Virus record (IMG/VR): IMGVR_UViG_3300009508_000011 | Coordinates: 124,001 to 188,000 of that record | Direction: 5' to 3' (one strand) | Length of the DNA stretch: 64,000 nt | Shown: piece after piece, positions 37,456-54,631 of the stretch | Position numbering within the stretch: the stretch's first letter is position 1 | How the letters are laid out: each line of letters starts with the position of its first letter | Notes under the pieces: generated by a model | What the model saw: the letters and a program-made list of their open reading frames with translations, nothing else | What the model was told of the DNA's origin: nothing | The model's database searches: none | Made by a program: the position numbers and the translations under genes

Positions 37456-38940
37456 TTAAACTAGACACAGGTTAGAATAAGCCGAAGCGTAAAGTGCTAC
37501 ATCATCTTCAGTCTCGACCACCACTGCGTATCGGATAGTTTGTTTAGATTCTGGCCAAGTAATAACCGTAATGGTTGGTGACTCTTTAGCCATTGCAGTT
37601 AACATATTCTTGGTCGGTGCATCCATACCAACTGTAAGCACTACATCCTTTGTACCACTGCGCTTACCTGACTTCCAGCCAACAGGAACAGTTAGGAATT
37701 TCGCATTTTCTACGATATCCTTACTTGGGACAAGTTTGACCTTACCTTTAGAATCTTCTTCCGATACATAGAATTTGTCTGTAACATCGGTAGAAACCAT
37801 TTCTGACTTCTTCTTACCCTCTACTCCCTTAGGGTCTAAATACTCTTCTAAGCGGGCGGTGAGGTGGTCTAAAGTCTCTAAACCTATAAAGGCTAAACCA
37901 GGTGGATGTGCAGGGTTCGTCAGTACTTGTTCACCAACTGTTGATAGTGTTGGTACACGTAATCCAACTTGTAGGTAGTCTGCACCGTTATGGTAGATTT
38001 CAGGGTATATCTTAGAACTACGAATTGTATCGAAGCGACCATAGATTGGTACTATGTATTCATTACCCACAGAATCTTGCTTGGTACGTAATGTTTCCAA
38101 TACTTTGTTTTCTTCTTTAAGGAAGACTACTGAGTTAGAAGCATCCGATACACGCTTACCATGAAGTTCATCATCACTGTGTACACCAAACATGTATACG
38201 TTGCGTCCATCTCTAGATAACTGTTTACCAGTGTTAGTGGTGAAGTACCACTTAGAGTGTAACAATAAACGATTGTACGGTGGAGTCTTAGGTTTCTTAG
38301 GCTTGACCGATTTACCTTTGTCTTTGCCGTCTTCTGCTATTTCCAATATTGTTTCATGCACTGGTTCATATACACCAGACCCAGCTAAGGCACCGCCTTT
38401 CTTGGCGCACTCATCAGCCTTATCATTACCAACATTACCAGAATGACCTTTAACCCAAGTATACTTAATATTGATGTTACTAGCATCAATGATTGCAGTA
38501 TCTAACATTTTCCATTGTGGTAGATAAGATGGGGTTACACCATCACCTTTTTTCCAACCACGGGCTTTCCATCCGTCAATCCACTTAGTAGCACCATTAA
38601 GTGCTATTTTAGAATCAGAACGAATTTCTAAATTTTTAATATCTTTATCGATGGCGTAGTTTATTGCATTTGTAATTGCATAAATCTCACCCTCGTTATT
38701 GTCACAGCGACCTTTCAACCCGCCCCAAGATTGCCATTCACTAAGCTTGACAGGTTCAGCAGGTTTGCCGTCCTTGCCTTTAACTACTTCCGTCGTAACC
38801 TTAAGACCTTTAGTGTCAACAGGTTTATCGTAAGTAATTGTCTCAGTGTAAGTATAACCATAATTACCCCAGCCACTCATTGTACCGGGATTCGGGCGAG
38901 CCGAGCCATCTGTATAAATTATGGCGTTTAATTCACTCAT
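37456..38940 (-). CDS. rnhA: Ribonuclease HI with C-terminal extension (phiKZ gp155-like)
   Basis: YTDGSARPNPG, NNEGEIYA, RSDS, W..RGWKK and WVKGHSGNVGNDKADECA. Confidence 0.9.
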   Translation of the reverse strand: MSELNAIIYTDGSARPNPGTMSGWGNYGYTYTETITYDKPVDTKGLKVTTEVVKGKDGKPAEPVKLSEWQSWGGLKGRCDNNEGEIYAITNAINYAIDKDIKNLEIRSDSKIALNGATKWIDGWKARGWKKGDGVTPSYLPQWKMLDTAIIDASNINIKYTWVKGHSGNVGNDKADECAKKGGALAGSGVYEPVHETILEIAEDGKDKGKSVKPKKPKTPPYNRLLLHSKWYFTTNTGKQLSRDGRNVYMFGVHSDDELHGKRVSDASNSVVFLKEENKVLETLRTKQDSVGNEYIVPIYGRFDTIRSSKIYPEIYHNGADYLQVGLRVPTLSTVGEQVLTNPAHPPGLAFIGLETLDHLTARLEEYLDPKGVEGKKKSEMVSTDVTDKFYVSEEDSKGKVKLVPSKDIVENAKFLTVPVGWKSGKRSGTKDVVLTVGMDAPTKNMLTAMAKESPTITVITWPESKQTIRYAVVVETEDDVALYASAYSNLCLV

Positions 38941-45232: not shown

Positions 45233-45318
45233 TATCTTAATATCCCCTAAGACGTTCTATACTAGAAGGGAGTGAAGTATTTTTTAGACGGCATAAAGGA
45301 CGGTTTCCCGTCCTAGGT

Positions 45319-46429: not shown

Positions 46430-46732
46430 TCAAATGACCCCCTGTCCTATTAGCATACGTAAATCCTCAGTTGACAGTACAATATGAAAATCGTACTCAG
46501 TGTCTTGTGGAGTAAGTACTTCAACAGTTTCCTTAAGTTCCTTTTCCCATAAGCCATACATAATTTCAACAGCCGTGTCGAAATCTTCCGCTAAGAGTGC
46601 TTTAGTAGCTATATGCATATCTACATAACCTACCTTACCAACAACCCTTAACATAGCCTTTGACATATACATGTCAGGTTCAAGTTTAATAATACCCTGA
46701 ACTATATTCGAAAACTTATTATCTCTATCCAC
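46430..46732 (-). CDS. Hypothetical protein
   Basis: 100 aa. GTG start after GAGG. Confidence 0.6.
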   Translation of the reverse strand: MDRDNKFSNIVQGIIKLEPDMYMSKAMLRVVGKVGYVDMHIATKALLAEDFDTAVEIMYGLWEKELKETVEVLTPQDTEYDFHIVLSTEDLRMLIGQGVI

Positions 46733-46844
46733 TATAGATACCTCATTAATTAGTGACTTCTTGAGTTATCTCTGGTCGGGCTTATAATTATAGTTATTCC
46801 CATACGCCCTCATGCAATAAACATGGAAAAGAAAAAATACTTCA

Positions 46845-47378
46845 CTAACTCCTCTTCTGGGGAGGGGAGAGATTATATAAAAACAATATTAATTCGAGTT
46901 CTACGAGAGTTAATATTGTATCCTTATCCCTTCTCTTCAATCTCTTAATTGTTTAATATTTAATCATCTTTATTCGCTATCTTAAGGATAGCTATACACT
47001 CAATATTTTTAATATATTTTTTTACTATATATTATGTCTCAACTAAAAGAAAGAGACAGAGAGAGTTCCTATGGTAACTAAGGAATATCGAATCGCCAAT
47101 AGTCTTCGACCTGCTTTATACTCTTTACGGGGTATAGGGTAGGTTGGACTTCCAGTGTTCTTAGAACATTCGTTGGCGTGGAGGAGAGTAGAGAAAGAAA
47201 CACCCCAACAAGTAGGAGTGTTATAACTATTAAAGAGACTCCCTAAGAGTCTCGCATTAATATTGTTATAGACTAGTAAATACTAAGAGATTATATAAAT
47301 TTTCTAAAAAAATTCGATTTTTGATTATTTTTTAAACAAAAAAAGAGGAGCCGTCAAGCTCCTCGATTTATGTCGTCT
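46845..47378 (+). ncRNA. Candidate structured non-coding RNA (boundaries approximate)
   Basis: ~650-bp ORF-free gap with at least 8 stems. The G-U wobble pairs are compatible only with the + strand. No family recognised. Confidence 0.45.
47345..47364. terminator. Terminator (U-tract on minus strand; motif-linked on plus)
   Basis: GAGGAGC-CGTCAA-GCTCCTC with an A-tract on the left and TTTATGTCGTC on the right. Confidence 0.7.
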
Positions 47379-47380
47379 AA

Positions 47381-48046
47381 CTAATCTTCTAATCCAGTCT
47401 TGAAGAAGTCAGGATTGATGATGTTGATATGGTCTTCATGTGTCACATGAACTTTCTCACCATGTAGCAACAACACAATTGACTCACCTGGGGCAGGCCA
47501 CTCATCATCATTCAGTTCCGAATGTCTCTCTCTGAAGTCTTCTAAACCTTCATGGGTTAGGTCACACACTCTATAAGCACCGTGTGTTTCCCAATGAACA
47601 ATGGGTGCAAGTGGGCGAATTGGTTCGTTAGTTCCCCAAATCTTTATAACCTTACCCTTAACATCGCTGTTAGGGACATTGTGGTTAGTAACGAGTAGAT
47701 ACTGATTACCCTTACGTTCGATAGACCAAGAGTTCTTCACGAACTCAGCTAAGGTACTACTGAATGCCATCTTCTCAGCTATACTACTAGTTAAGTAGAT
47801 ACGTCCTTCAAGAGACTCACGGAGAGTCTCCTCGTCAAACTTACCAATGGCAAGCTTACCCTGAATCTCAATACTGAACCCAGCACCTTTGGTGCAGATA
47901 TAGTAAGCATTGAAATCACGACGTACATCTGGAGTAGCGTTCTGTAAAGAAACACTCCATTCTGCAGTTTCAGGAATAGCCCCACGAATGATATCATGTT
48001 CGCCATCTTTCACTTCTTGTAGTTTACGAGGTTTAAATTCTGACAT
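47381..48046 (-). CDS. Hypothetical protein sharing a C-terminal module with 49280-50449
   Basis: 221 aa with AGGAG RBS. Confidence 0.7.
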   Translation of the reverse strand: MSEFKPRKLQEVKDGEHDIIRGAIPETAEWSVSLQNATPDVRRDFNAYYICTKGAGFSIEIQGKLAIGKFDEETLRESLEGRIYLTSSIAEKMAFSSTLAEFVKNSWSIERKGNQYLLVTNHNVPNSDVKGKVIKIWGTNEPIRPLAPIVHWETHGAYRVCDLTHEGLEDFRERHSELNDDEWPAPGESIVLLLHGEKVHVTHEDHINIINPDFFKTGLED

Positions 48047-48074: not shown

Positions 48075-48749
48075 TTAGATTGATAGATTGTTTATACGGT
48101 AGTTTAGGATAGTATCCAAATATACCTCTGAGTCATCGAGTATGAAGTAAACACGATGTCCGTCAGTTTGTGGTTTATGTACTTGATAGTCCCCGTCTAA
48201 AACATAGCCACGGTATACGAACGTATACTTCACATCGTTATGTTTAAACAGCGCACAGTTAAACTTAAGTTCATCCATTGAGAGATTAAAGAGTGGATAA
48301 GTTCGATTAATCTCTTCGAAAGTATTCTTGTCACAGGCACCAATGGGTAAGGAGTCAAACGCCAGTAAACTATTAAGTAGTTGGCAACTGCTACCCAGCA
48401 CTTTATTACTAGACCACCTGACAACCACTTCACGATGATAACTTAAAGTCTTTACTAACTTACCAGACTCTGAGTTACCACCATCCATTTCAAGTACGTA
48501 CTTGAAGTTCAATGACTTTGTTAACATGCTACTAAAACGTGGACACTCTTCACCAATGTAGATACATGGAGAACGTGAAAGTATAGATTCAACAGTATCG
48601 TAATCCTTACCAGTGTCCATCACTCTAGCTGACAATACCCACCCAAGTGCTTTGTTTCTTTCACCAATAACTCGGTAGCGGAAAGCATTAACCGCGTAGT
48701 TAGATTCAATATGTTTTAAGCGCATTGTAAGCCCCCTGTTAGCCAACAA
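48075..48749 (-). CDS. Hypothetical protein
   Basis: ~220 aa. The start may be MRLKH. Confidence 0.6.
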   Translation of the reverse strand: MLANRGLTMRLKHIESNYAVNAFRYRVIGERNKALGWVLSARVMDTGKDYDTVESILSRSPCIYIGEECPRFSSMLTKSLNFKYVLEMDGGNSESGKLVKTLSYHREVVVRWSSNKVLGSSCQLLNSLLAFDSLPIGACDKNTFEEINRTYPLFNLSMDELKFNCALFKHNDVKYTFVYRGYVLDGDYQVHKPQTDGHRVYFILDDSEVYLDTILNYRINNLSI

Positions 48750-50952: not shown

Positions 50953-50974
50953 CATTAGAATAATATATGCGTGA
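50953..50974 (-). promoter_or_regulatory. Putative early promoter
   Basis: TCACGCATATATTATTCTAATG on the minus strand. Confidence 0.65.
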
Positions 50975-51018: not shown

Positions 51019-51543
51019 TTATTGTTGTGCAGCTAGTGCTGCATCATCTTCAGCCTTACGAGCATCAGCTTTTTCCTGAGTCCATAAGTACCAGTTACTT
51101 GCTTGCATTTCCTGCCAATCAGGATACCAGCCATTAAATACTTCACCTTCTTCAGTTACTATGTCAAATAAGAATGCATTGTATTTATCAGTTACGCTAG
51201 TAGGGTATTCCGTTAAACTACCGTCTGCTATTTCCGACAATGGTGGGATTGTTTTCTTAGTTGTACCTAACTTCACATGCATGAAGTATGTTCTCCAGTT
51301 GCTGCAACCAACCTTATGTCCTTGTAACATTAAATGTAATGCTTCAGGGAAAGTTAGTTCAGTTTCAGGATTGTATTCAGAATCGAATACAGATTTAGGT
51401 ATCCAAGTAACGGAAGCATCCGCACTTGTTACTTCATAACCGTCAGCACCTTCTGCATGACCGGTCATTGAGGGATACTGTGGTGTTGCAGCTACTTGCA
51501 TAGGAACTGCGTCGACTACTTTGATGGCAACGTGTTTAGTCAT
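51019..51543 (-). CDS. Two-domain protein with C-terminal DUF2829/Tad2-like domain
   Basis: N-terminal 'K.V.A.PM...GY.V......W.PK..F...Y' module, then LTFPEAL..M..G.KV...W...GW.P....M.A..W. Confidence 0.6.
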   Translation of the reverse strand: MTKHVAIKVVDAVPMQVAATPQYPSMTGHAEGADGYEVTSADASVTWIPKSVFDSEYNPETELTFPEALHLMLQGHKVGCSNWRTYFMHVKLGTTKKTIPPLSEIADGSLTEYPTSVTDKYNAFLFDIVTEEGEVFNGWYPDWQEMQASNWYLWTQEKADARKAEDDAALAAQQ

Positions 51544-54493: not shown

Positions 54494-54553
54494 GATTCTC
54501 TTCCTTTTATTTAGAGATAGATTATATAACTACAATTGTTTAAGTAGCTACTT

Positions 54554-54571
54554 CACTAATGTAATATGTAT
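54554..54571 (-). promoter_or_regulatory. Putative early promoter
   Basis: ATACATATTACATTAGTG on the minus strand, containing CATATTAC (phiKZ early motif is TATATTAC). Confidence 0.55.
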
Positions 54572-54596
54572 CTATCGTTTTTTGGAAACGACATAA

Positions 54597-54618
54597 ATGG
54601 GAGTCTTTCGACTCCCAT
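54597..54618. terminator. Terminator hairpin
   Basis: ATGGGAGTC-TTTC-GACTCCCAT flanked on both sides by TTATG(T)YGT motifs. Confidence 0.7.
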
Positions 54619-54631
54619 GGTTTATGTTGTC

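What the first reader, a model, noticed from the sequence alone, without database searches (positions are those of the whole stretch)
46832..47378. Candidate ~0.5-kb structured ncRNA on the plus strand, inside a minus-strand gene region
Seen: the largest ORF-free gap. It holds a 22-bp stem 47101-47124/47129-47150 (2-nt bulge, 7 G-U pairs, TTAC loop), a closing helix 47094-47100/47172-47178 that also encloses hairpin 47155-47169, and stems at 46849-46869 (2 G-U), 46883-46892/46910-46919, 46976-46992, 47035-47058, 47066-47085 and 47235-47253. The wobble pairs are G-U only on +; they would be A-C mismatches on -. A promoter-like AAAAAATAC sits at 46832 (+), and a hairpin with the terminator-linked TTTATGTCGTC sits at 47345-47378 (+), although no + ORF lies nearby. 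Inference: an undescribed phage ncRNA. An alternative is a replication or packaging site in AT-rich DNA.
Basis: partly seen in the sequence, partly recalled or inferred. Interest (0 to 1): 0.7.

Follow-up and report, generated by a model that had tools for sequence, protein, structure and literature searches.

The report
New structured RNA in marine jumbo phages
The largest gene-free gap of this window, in a phiKZ-like jumbo phage from seawater, holds a non-coding transcription unit whose RNA fold is kept by compensating mutations in nine related phage genomes; it matches no known RNA family, and its function is unknown.

Summary

- **Setting.** The window lies in a 206-kb phiKZ-like (Chimalliviridae) phage genome from a marine metagenome. 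The gap 46733-47380 is its only ORF-free stretch over 250 bp.
- **Signals.** On the + strand the gap has a middle-type phage promoter motif (AAAAAATAC, 46832-46840), a conserved internal TATG (47033-47036), and a phage-type terminator (hairpin 47345-47364 followed by TTTATGTCGTCT).
- **Conservation.** A covariance model of the core (47034-47258) hits once per genome in nine related genomes (SbcC 67-100% identical), always at the same place.
- **Covariation.** 93% of pair cells are paired, against 37-48% when partners are slid. 27 of 56 pairs changed on both sides, 19 of them among the 22 pairs of the long arm.
- **Strand.** There are 65 G-U cells against 5 A-C cells. The folding z-score is -1.8 to -4.6 on the + strand and about 0 on the - strand.
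- **Not something known.** There is no conserved ORF, no Rfam 15 match, no tRNA, and no homologue in six cultured chimalliviruses.

No transcript evidence could be obtained, so the function is inferred. I think a stable, fold-dependent, protein-binding RNA is most likely. A replication-priming (R-loop) transcript in these primase-less phages is the main and most novel rival.

The parts
46832..46840 (+). P1: promoter motif AAAAAATAC of the phage's middle type. The predicted start is near G46859, the G of TCTG at 46856-46859.
   Evidence: The motif is enriched 17-fold in oriented upstream regions and precedes the SbcC, UvsX-like and RNAP-subunit genes. It is present on the same strand in all relatives (AAAAAAAC in L012). 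The phiKZ middle motif AAanTTACc lies about 24 nt before the start (PMC4666361).
46859..46995 (+). RNA-A (5' domain, about 140 nt). The G-run 46859-46871 pairs with the CU-run about 46923-46936, enclosing the AU-rich hairpin 46883-46919 with its conserved apical CGAG..CGAG.
   Evidence: RNAalifold on nine sequences, plus pair counts: 90.7% of cells paired against 51-60% slid, and the covariation score was reached by 0 of 500 shuffles. The count of pairs changed on both sides (8) is not beyond the shuffles, which reached it in 78 of 500. Support is moderate.
46976..46992 (+). Hairpin ending RNA-A, a candidate weak internal terminator. It is followed by TATACACTC, a degenerate form of the terminator-linked TATGYCGTC.
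   Evidence: A hairpin is kept at this position with a different stem sequence in L013 and L014, where it is GC-richer and followed by TTTATGACTCG or ATATATGACTCG. It contains a U-G pair only on the + strand.
47020..47036 (+). P2: conserved block TTTTACTATATATTATG. TATG at 47033-47036 is a candidate late-type start with G47036 as +1.
   Evidence: The block is almost invariant in seven genomes, and L013 and L014 have TATAGTATG. It is the best conserved piece of the gap. phiKZ late promoters are TATG with G as +1 (PMC4666361). G47036 is the first base of helix H1.
47036..47253 (+). RNA-B core with seven helices.
- H1: 47036-47040/47053-47057
- H2: 47066-47070/47081-47085
- H3: 47094-47099/47173-47178
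- H4 (long arm): 47101-47150
- H5: 47155-47169
- H6: 47199-47222
- H7: 47235-47253
   Evidence: CM R1 gives one hit per genome in nine genomes. 27 of 56 pairs changed on both sides, and 93.4% of cells are paired. MAFFT+RNAalifold, without my model, recovers H2, H3, H4 and H7. There are 65 G-U against 5 A-C cells. In strains about 3% diverged, only one substitution (47129 G>T) was listed in the core; the table is truncated (72 rows not shown), and the full list shows none in the core at low, partial coverage.
47101..47150 (+). H4: a 22-bp arm made of 5 bp, a 2-nt bulge and 17 bp, with loop TTAC. It is the helix with the most covariation.
   Evidence: 19 of its 22 pairs changed on both sides across nine genomes. 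In L014 the same 5 bp + internal loop + 17 bp layout is built from an entirely different sequence (read by hand).
47254..47344 (+). AT-rich 3' tail (about 20-26% G+C), poorly conserved in sequence. It holds the second copy of GATTATATAAA (47289-47299) and AAATTTT-type tracts.
   Evidence: GATTATATAAA occurs only twice in the 206-kb genome, at 46871-46881 and 47289-47299.
47345..47379 (+). Terminator of the + strand unit: hairpin 47345-47364 followed by GATTTATGTCGTCTA. Read on the - strand, the same hairpin followed by T7 ends gene 47381-48046.
   Evidence: It has the same layout (A-run, hairpin, TATGTCGTCT) as the terminators between convergent genes at genome positions 94658 and 152333. The - strand terminator was called by the scan. 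It is conserved in all relatives.
46430..46732 (-). Flanking gene (100 aa, GTG start, N-terminus MDRDNKF). It is transcribed away from P1 and always lies next to the RNA unit.
   Evidence: It is conserved in all relatives, including L015. It has no family or fold match.

Best explanation
The gap is a dedicated non-coding transcription unit on the + strand of a marine phiKZ-like, nucleus-forming jumbo phage.

**Inferred from motifs.** The phage's own RNA polymerases start at a middle-type promoter (AAAAAATAC, start near G46859) and probably again at a conserved TATG (G47036). They stop at a phage-type terminator (47345-47379). This would give a 5' RNA of about 140 nt, a 3' RNA of about 340 nt, and perhaps a read-through of about 520 nt.

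**Shown by comparison of nine genomes.** Selection acts on the RNA fold of the + strand. The 3' RNA has a 5' stem-loop and a UUCCU/AGGAA hairpin. A long bulged 22-bp arm is closed by CGCCAA/UUGGCG. Two further hairpins follow, joined by invariant single-stranded junctions such as UAUCGAAU.

**Inferred function, and the weakest step.** The RNA acts as a folded, stable molecule. Its invariant loops and junctions would bind a phage or host protein, as a scaffold, regulator or decoy RNP, during middle to late infection.

**My estimates.**
- A real structure-constrained + strand RNA: about 0.85.
- A two-RNA layout with an internal start: about 0.5.
- A trans-acting, protein-binding role: about 0.45-0.5.
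For: **Conserved place and sequence.** R1 gives one hit per genome in nine genomes, always between the roughly 100-aa gene and a variable gene block, about 1.5 kb from SbcC. The gap is as conserved as, or more conserved than, the flanking lineage-specific genes. It is almost free of variants among strains.

**Fold under selection.** 27 of 56 pairs changed on both sides. 93.4% of cells are paired, against 37-48% slid. No shuffle out of 500 reached the observed values. An alignment made without my model recovers H2, H3, H4 and H7 with 11 compensated pairs.

**Strand.** There are 65 G-U against 5 A-C cells. The z-score is -1.8 to -4.6 on the RNA strand and -1.5 to +0.4 on the opposite strand, in all nine.

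**Signals.** The AAAAATAC motif is enriched 17-fold and oriented with genes. Hairpin+TATGYCGTC marks the ends of transcription units. The site at 47345-47379 has the layout seen at convergent units. The phiKZ promoter rules come from PMC4666361.

**Non-coding.** There is no conserved ORF. The ATG at 47071 is lost in 4 of the 7 closest homologues; L013 and L014 do not have it either. Indels are not multiples of three.

**Sequence-specific contacts.** The junctions are invariant while the stems covary, which points to sequence-specific contacts.
Against: - No transcript has been seen. The only 'RNA?' run covers the flanking genes as evenly as the gap and is kept as contigs without strand.
- Promoter and start sites are inferred from motifs only. 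P1 lacks the TATAG/TATG element that most other AAAAATAC promoters of this genome have.
- Only helix H4 has dense covariation. H3 never varies and H7 has only one varying pair; H1 is weak.
- The main pair counts were made on an alignment fitted to my model.
- The family is known from nine closely related uncultured genomes only.
- Nothing identifies a binding partner. The neighbouring 100-aa protein gave a poor model (pLDDT 67) and no fold match.
- A more distant relative (L015) keeps a non-coding unit at the same place but with an unrelated sequence. This fits a role that depends on position or on transcription at least as well as it fits a specific RNP.
Confidence: 0.5

Rival explanations
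1. Replication-origin transcript. The unit is transcribed to make a G-rich RNA that stays hybridised to the template (an R-loop) at or before the AT-rich tail. The RNA is then processed by the phage RNase H-clamp protein and primes DNA synthesis. The comparisons are ColE1 RNA II, the T4 oriF/oriG promoter-plus-unwinding-element origins, and mitochondrial LSP/CSB priming.
For: - Chimalliviruses have no recognisable primase, and RNA-DNA hybrids have been proposed as their replication start sites (PMC13648698 and PMC13648687).
- The unit lies at the edge of the replication/recombination block. SbcC-like is 1.5 kb away, and RNase H-like (37456-38940) and UvsX-like genes are nearby.
- It uses the same promoter class as those genes.
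- The transcript starts with a G-cluster (GGGGAGGGGAG). GC skew on the transcribed strand is +0.2 at 47000-47300, in a genome that is otherwise negative.
- An AT-rich stretch of about 90 bp follows the structured part.
- L015 keeps a transcribed non-coding unit at the same place, with long G-runs and iteron-like 12-15-nt tandem repeats but an unrelated sequence.
Against: - The strong selection on an RNA fold, with invariant loops, is not needed for a simple R-loop primer, although ColE1 RNA II does need its fold.
- The unit ends in an efficient-looking terminator.
- There are no iterons in the window's own copy.
- Cumulative GC skew is monotonic and gives no origin signal.
- Nothing here tests hybrid formation.
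Confidence: 0.2
2. Anti-defence decoy RNA. An abundant folded RNA binds or distracts a host immune factor, as phage pseudo-ToxI repeats and RNA anti-CRISPRs do.
For: - The unit borders a hypervariable block of small genes of unknown function (the 221-aa gene has 23-38% DNA identity among relatives).
- That block includes a Tad2-like anti-Thoeris protein at 51019-51543 (Pfam marks).
- L015 carries a different, repeat-rich RNA at the same place, as expected for fast-evolving counter-defence loci.
Against: - It resembles no CRISPR repeat, ToxI-type 36-nt repeat or retron RNA, and no Rfam family of these kinds matches.
- The window's copy has no tandem repeats.
- The RNA is far more conserved than the neighbouring accessory genes.
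Confidence: 0.1
3. Cis-acting insulator. Convergent + strand transcription and the bidirectional terminator only separate the early - strand operon (50919 to 47381) from the middle - strand operon (46732 to 42740). The RNA product has no role.
For: - The unit lies exactly between a - strand block with an early-type TATATTA promoter at 50961 and - strand genes with AAAAATAC promoters.
- The terminator works on both strands.
Against: An insulator does not need a 220-nt fold kept by 27 compensated pairs, nor 40-nt invariant single-stranded blocks.
Confidence: 0.1
4. A DNA-level site only (packaging site, origin with protein-binding sites, or bent AT-rich DNA), with the hairpins incidental.
For: - The first half of the gap is among the most AT-rich 300-bp windows of the genome.
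- The near-palindromic GATTATATAAA occurs twice here and nowhere else in the genome.
- AAATTTT-type tracts recur in the tails of all relatives.
Against: DNA cruciforms or protein sites would be strand-symmetric. Here G-U outnumbers A-C by 65 to 5, and only one strand folds better than shuffles. The compensatory changes preserve pairing, not sequence.
Confidence: 0.05
5. An unrecognised protein gene, or a self-splicing intron or other known ribozyme.
For: Short ORFs exist, for example 23 codons from ATG 47071 and 41 codons at 46823-46948.
Against: - No ORF is conserved in frame, start or length.
- No group I/II intron, ribozyme or any other Rfam family matches, even at E up to 10.
- There is no interrupted host gene. 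The flanking genes lie on the other strand and are complete in all relatives.
Confidence: 0.03

Closest known systems
phiKZ-type transcription signals: middle motif AAanTTACc at about -24, late TATG with G as +1, and conserved-motif terminators (Yakunina 2015, PMC4666361; Putzeys 2024, PMC10914365; 201phi2-1, PMC11512511)
   Same: The gap uses the same grammar as the rest of this genome. It has AAAAAATAC about 23 nt before a G-start, a conserved TATG, and a GC hairpin followed by a conserved terminator-linked motif.
   Different: The motifs are this lineage's own variants (AAAAAATAC; TTTATGYCGTCT after the hairpin). Here they enclose no gene. None has been tested experimentally in this phage.
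sRNAs mapped in phiKZ and 201phi2-1 by ONT-cappable-seq, for example sRNA005 and the gp182 5'UTR sRNA (PMC11512511)
   Same: They are non-coding RNAs made by chimalliviruses, and at least one is conserved across genera.
   Different: Those are under 250 nt, mostly 5'UTR-derived by premature termination, and lie upstream of a tail gene. This unit stands alone, is about 520 nt, lies opposite to its neighbours and sits next to SbcC. CM R2 finds nothing credible in phiKZ, where the 17-bit hit lies antisense inside gp145.
ColE1 RNA II, T4 oriF/oriG and mitochondrial LSP primer transcripts
   Same: Each has a promoter, a structured or G-rich non-coding RNA of some hundred nucleotides, and then an AT-rich stretch, close to replication genes. 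The phage family has RNase H but no primase.
   Different: No antisense RNA I partner, no shown hybrid and no mapped origin are known here. The unit ends in a terminator.
Large phage-associated structured RNAs of unknown function (GOLLD, ROOL), phi29 pRNA and the T4 stable RNAs C and D
   Same: They are stand-alone, highly structured, phage-borne non-coding RNAs. pRNA also has a three-way junction.
   Different: No Rfam model of these matches. The hosts, sizes and genomic settings differ. The three-way junction here is lost in L013 and L014, where H5 is absent and H4 is extended instead.

Membership tests
Any Rfam 15 family (4227 models, including group I/II introns, 6S, tmRNA, RNase P, pRNA, GOLLD, ROOL, OLE, HEARO, IMES and Y RNA) | A covariance-model score at or above the family's gathering threshold | tested here: not met
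   There were no hits in the whole window at gathering thresholds. At E up to 10 over 46600-47500, the best hit is STnc50 at 29.7 bits against a threshold of 55, and it lies on the terminator hairpin.
tRNA / tmRNA | A cloverleaf or tmRNA fold found by ARAGORN | tested here: not met
   No such genes were found in the window.
Group I or group II intron | It interrupts a host gene whose exons flank it on the same strand | tested here: not met
   The flanking genes are on the opposite strand, and the left-hand gene is complete and conserved in all relatives; the right-hand flank is a variable gene block.
phiKZ-type middle promoter | The motif AAanTTACc centred about 24 nt before the start, used by the phage RNA polymerase | tested here: inconclusive
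   The motif AAAAAATAC is at 46832-46840 and is enriched and oriented genome-wide. It is conserved in relatives. The start site and the polymerase were not tested, and the usual TATAG/TATG element is replaced by TCTG.
phiKZ-type late promoter | TATG with the G as the transcription start, plus undefined downstream determinants | tested here: inconclusive
   TATG at 47033-47036 is invariant in nine genomes, and G47036 opens helix H1. TATG alone is known not to be sufficient (PMC4666361).
Phage-type terminator of this genome | A GC-rich hairpin followed by (T)TTATG(C/T)CGTC in the direction of transcription | tested here: met
   47345-47379 on the + strand has it. Where the motif follows a hairpin in an intergenic region, the gene ahead of it nearly always lies on the motif's strand; the exceptions are this site and 54623, both between - strand genes.
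ColE1 RNA II-like primer / R-loop origin | A persistent RNA-DNA hybrid at the origin that is cut by RNase H and extended by the DNA polymerase | not testable with these tools
   Only indirect features are seen: a G-cluster start, positive GC skew, an AT-rich tail and nearby replication genes.
ColE1 RNA II-like primer / R-loop origin | An antisense regulator RNA (RNA I) overlapping the 5' part | tested here: not met
   No - strand promoter motif of either class lies inside 46859-47340. The - strand shows no folding signal.
Structured ncRNA in general (the criterion used for new Rfam motifs) | Compensatory base changes that keep the helices across homologues, on one strand only | tested here: met
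Structured ncRNA in general | A transcript of the predicted strand and ends is detected | not testable with these tools
   No strand-resolved RNA run holds this phage.

The most novel reading that the evidence does not exclude
The unit is the long-sought replication start of primase-less, nucleus-forming jumbo phages. A dedicated, folded, G-rich transcript made by the phage RNA polymerase forms an R-loop, is trimmed by the RNase H-clamp subunit of the phage DNA polymerase, and primes leading-strand synthesis. The unrelated, repeat-rich unit at the same place in L015 would be a second version of the same device.
Probability: 0.15. Interest if true: 0.9.

Novelty: categorically new. Interest (0 to 1): 0.66.

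Why it matters
Nucleus-forming jumbo phages (Chimalliviridae) are studied closely for their cell-like compartment, their own RNA polymerases and their resistance to DNA-targeting immunity. Almost nothing is known about their non-coding RNAs.

Here a stand-alone RNA gene of about 0.5 kb has a fold under strong selection. It has its own phage-type promoter and terminator and resembles no known RNA family. That adds a new RNA class to this group and gives a concrete object for experiments.

If the RNA binds a protein, it points to an unknown RNP of the phage nucleus or of host takeover. If it forms a priming R-loop, it would explain how these phages start DNA replication without a primase, a question that two 2026 preprints leave open.

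"Categorically new" refers to the RNA family. The general kind, a phage-encoded non-coding RNA, is known.

Tried and rejected
- **Rfam and ARAGORN.** Rfam at gathering thresholds and at E up to 10, and ARAGORN, gave nothing.
- **Direct similarity searches.** blastn of the gap against 50,697 phage records gave no match. Single-protein searches of IMG/VR with the two neighbouring genes found no relatives.
- **Finding relatives.** An SbcC alignment in IMG/VR found only L002 and L003. Relatives were finally reached through the 5.8-billion-protein search and its contigs.
- **Exact DNA patterns.** They found the same two IMG/VR records, the window's own or near-identical contigs in metagenomes, and two hits in bacterial MAGs. 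The MAG hits do not match the RNA model, so they look like chance matches and give no clue to the host.
- **RNA evidence.** Run X13, labelled RNA-Seq, covers the flanking genes as evenly as the gap and is kept as strandless contigs. X24 is of unknown type. Neither is informative.
- **L015 homology.** It was rejected: 18 bits with the long arm deleted.
- **Cultured chimalliviruses.** Eowyn, LucasX, Yong MS32, BONAISHI, Goslar and phiKZ gave no credible R2 hit.
- **Kissing loop.** A contact between the H2 loop (GUAA) and the H4 loop (UUAC) does not covary in relatives (read).
- **Long-range pairing.** The pairing 46882-46898/47251-47267 (17 nt) is only about 60-70% kept in L002 and L003 and lies in AT-rich sequence, so I did not adopt it.
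- **Small ORFs.** They are not conserved.
- **The 100-aa neighbour as an RNA-binding partner.** The model has pLDDT 67.5 and Foldseek gave no hit with E below 0.1.
- **Origin signal.** Cumulative GC skew is monotonic.
Full report
**Where the window lies.** The window is bases 124001-188000 of a 206,117-bp IMG/VR virus record with direct terminal repeats and 40% G+C. Its large proteins match the split multisubunit RNA polymerase subunits, tail sheath and virion proteins of phiKZ-like phages. It is therefore a chimallivirus, one of the nucleus-forming jumbo phages. The nearest cultured phages share only about 42% identity or less in the tail sheath and about 34% or less in the SbcC-like protein. 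Runs that hold near-identical DNA are marine, aquaculture, sponge and sand metagenomes. No host could be identified.

**The observation.** 46733-47380 is the only stretch over 250 bp without a called ORF in the window. It lies between two - strand genes, 46430-46732 (100 aa) and 47381-48046 (221 aa). The 22-bp arm 47101-47150 has a TC bulge, seven G-U pairs and a TTAC loop, exactly as described. The + strand of 46832-47378 folds with z = -6.8 and the - strand with z = -3.7.

**Transcription signals of this phage.**
- An unbiased k-mer count over 120 oriented upstream regions found AAAAATAC in 17, where about 1 is expected. It also found a second class, TATATTA(TCTnAGTGA).
- AAAAATAC is usually followed, 13-17 nt later, by TATAG or TATG. 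It precedes the SbcC-like, UvsX-like and RNA-polymerase-subunit genes.
- This matches the published phiKZ rules. The middle motif AAanTTACc is centred about 24 nt before the start. The late promoter TATG has its G as +1 (PMC4666361).
- Transcription units end in a GC hairpin followed by (T)TTATG(C/T)CGTC in the direction of transcription. Between convergent genes, the hairpin has an A-run before it and TATGTCGTCT after it.
- The site at 47345-47379 has this convergent layout on the + strand, although no + strand gene lies upstream. Read on the - strand, the same hairpin followed by T7 is a classical terminator for gene 47381-48046.
- The gap therefore carries a + oriented promoter motif (46832-46840, predicted start near G46859) and a + oriented terminator. 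A second, highly conserved block, TTTTACTATATATTATG, ends at G47036.

**Relatives.** L002 and L003 (IMG/VR) have SbcC 85% and 79% identical to the window's and align through the whole gap at 81% column identity. That is better than the neighbouring coding DNA. A search of 5.8 billion proteins with the SbcC-like protein gave further relatives at 85, 77, 71, 69, 68, 67 and 40% identity, and I fetched their contigs. All of them have a gene-free gap of 570-680 bp at the same place, upstream of the roughly 100-aa gene. Relatives at 26-28% identity have a different gene order and no such gap.

**The RNA model.** I built covariance model R1 from the three closest sequences, covering 47034-47258 with 56 pairs. 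It hits exactly once per genome. In nine genomes it finds full-length matches at the expected place and strand:

| Genomes | Score (bits) |
|---|---|
| window, L002, L003, L016 | 240-252 |
| L017 | 213 |
| L011, L012 | 127-135 |
| L013, L014 | 50 |

**Covariation.**
- On the nine-sequence alignment, 93.4% of pair cells are standard pairs, against 37-48% when the partners are slid by 1-3 columns.
- 27 of 56 pairs changed on both sides, and no shuffle out of 500 reaches any of the five measures.
- The long arm H4 carries 19 of these pairs. In L014 the same 5 bp + internal loop + 17 bp layout is built from a wholly different sequence.
- H2 changes from UU/AA to CC/GG, and H7 changes C-G to G-C.
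- That alignment was fitted to my model, so I repeated the analysis with MAFFT plus RNAalifold. It recovers H2, H3, the inner part of H4 and H7, with 11 compensated pairs.
- H3 is invariant and H7 nearly so, so they say little either way. H1 and H6 are kept with some mismatches. H5 is a short hairpin of variable sequence and is absent in L013 and L014, where H4 is extended instead.

**Strand.** In the helices, 65 cells are G-U and 5 are A-C. Read from the - strand, pairing would fall from 93% to 81%. The minimum free energy z-score against dinucleotide shuffles is -1.8 to -4.6 for the + strand and -1.5 to +0.4 for the opposite strand, in all nine homologues.

**The 5' domain.**
- Between P1 and the TATG block, all nine genomes share the same elements: a G-run at the predicted start, a CU-run that can pair with it, and an AU-rich hairpin with a conserved apical CGAG..CGAG.
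- A terminal hairpin (46976-46992) follows. It has a different, GC-richer stem in L013 and L014 and is followed by a degenerate terminator-linked motif.
- Pair counts support this fold moderately: 90.7% paired against 51-60% slid.
- I therefore read the unit as two RNAs. RNA-A runs from about 46859 to about 46995, and RNA-B from 47036 to about 47375. Read-through from P1 may give a single RNA of about 520 nt.

**Not coding, not a known RNA.** No ORF is conserved in start, frame or length. Rfam 15 gives no hit at gathering thresholds in the window and only noise at E up to 10 in the gap. ARAGORN finds nothing. A model built from all nine sequences (R2) finds nothing in Eowyn, LucasX, Yong MS32, BONAISHI or Goslar. 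In phiKZ it finds one 17-bit hit that lies antisense inside the tail-sheath gene, so it is spurious. Full-text searches found no description of such an RNA. The sRNAs reported for phiKZ and 201phi2-1 are short, mostly 5'UTR-derived and lie elsewhere.

**Constraint within the species.** In strains about 3% diverged over the neighbourhood, only four substitutions are listed between 46778 and 47390. One is in the RNA-B core (47129 G>T, next to the H4 loop); the table is truncated (72 rows not shown), which lists all differences in the gap, shows none in the core at low, partial coverage. The rest are length changes in A/T runs of the tail. The 221-aa gene next door is dense with changes.

**Expression.** I could not test it. 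The one run labelled RNA-Seq (X13) covers the flanks as evenly as the gap, at depth 3-5, and is held as strandless contigs.

**What it does.**
- Shown: selection keeps a + strand RNA fold and several invariant single-stranded blocks.
- Inferred: the phage polymerases transcribe it from P1 and P2 in middle to late infection.
- Most likely mechanism: a stable folded RNA that works through sequence-specific contacts of its junctions and loops with a protein.
- Main rival: a replication-priming transcript. Two 2026 preprints report that chimalliviruses lack a primase, carry an RNase H-clamp subunit in their DNA polymerase, and may start replication at RNA-DNA hybrids.
- In favour of the rival: the unit lies next to the replication/recombination genes, shares their promoter class, and starts with a G-cluster. 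It also has positive GC skew on the transcribed strand and is followed by an AT-rich stretch.
- Also in favour: the distant relative L015 keeps a transcribed, strongly folding (z = -8.3) non-coding unit at the same place. That unit has G-runs and 12-15-nt tandem repeats, but its sequence is unrelated.
- A purely DNA-level site is unlikely because of the strand asymmetry.

**Verdict.** This is a real, conserved, structure-constrained non-coding RNA locus of a new family. It is limited so far to one clade of uncultured marine chimalliviruses. Its function is unknown, and expression has not yet been shown.

Noticed in passing
window 51019-51543 (-): The 174-aa protein matches the Thoeris anti-defence Tad2-like domain (PF11195, E = 1e-6, 29.6 bits against a cut-off of 25). 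The same Pfam mark is on the equivalent gene in L013, L014 and L017 (faint in L012).
   Followed up: partly
window 45277-45310, 28333, 37011, 47369 and 54623, and elsewhere in the genome: There is a genome-wide terminator grammar: a GC hairpin followed by (T)TTATG(C/T)CGTCT in the direction of transcription. At 54623 the motif stands on both sides of one hairpin, between two - strand genes.
   Followed up: partly
window 54494-54631 (- strand), and genome positions 32892, 37161, 53363 and 198638: An element of about 45 nt (…GTCGTTCCCAGAAAACGATAGATACATATTACATTAGTGA…) is repeated upstream of at least five genes. It is probably the early, virion-polymerase promoter class, related to the TATATTATCTnAGTGA motif.
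   Followed up: no
window 48076-48079: Strain contigs in runs X5 and X7 carry 609 extra bases between the 221-aa and 224-aa genes. This is an indel polymorphism in the variable gene block.
   Followed up: no
L015:7957-8190: A distant relative (SbcC 40% identical) has a cascade of short tandem repeats (periods 9-15 nt, 2-3 copies each) and long G-runs at the equivalent place. They lie between a same-strand AAAAAATAC promoter and a hairpin+TATGACGT terminator.
   Followed up: partly
window 46871-46881 and 47289-47299: GATTATATAAA occurs only twice in the 206-kb genome, once near each end of the non-coding unit. Both copies are kept in the closest relatives; only the 5' copy is kept in L011-L014.
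   Followed up: partly
genome 81292-82100 (outside the window): This is the largest ORF-free gap of the genome (809 bp). I did not examine it. R1 does not match it.
   Followed up: no
window 37456-38940 (-): The 494-aa protein has an RNase H domain (PHROG 3265/531). It is the likely counterpart of the RNase H-clamp (Rhc) subunit of the chimallivirus DNA polymerase described in 2026 preprints. It lies 8 kb from the RNA unit.
   Followed up: no
window 46801-46804 (- strand TATG): A conserved TATG on the - strand, about 70 nt upstream of the GTG start of the 100-aa gene, is a candidate late-type promoter. It would fire away from P1.
   Followed up: no
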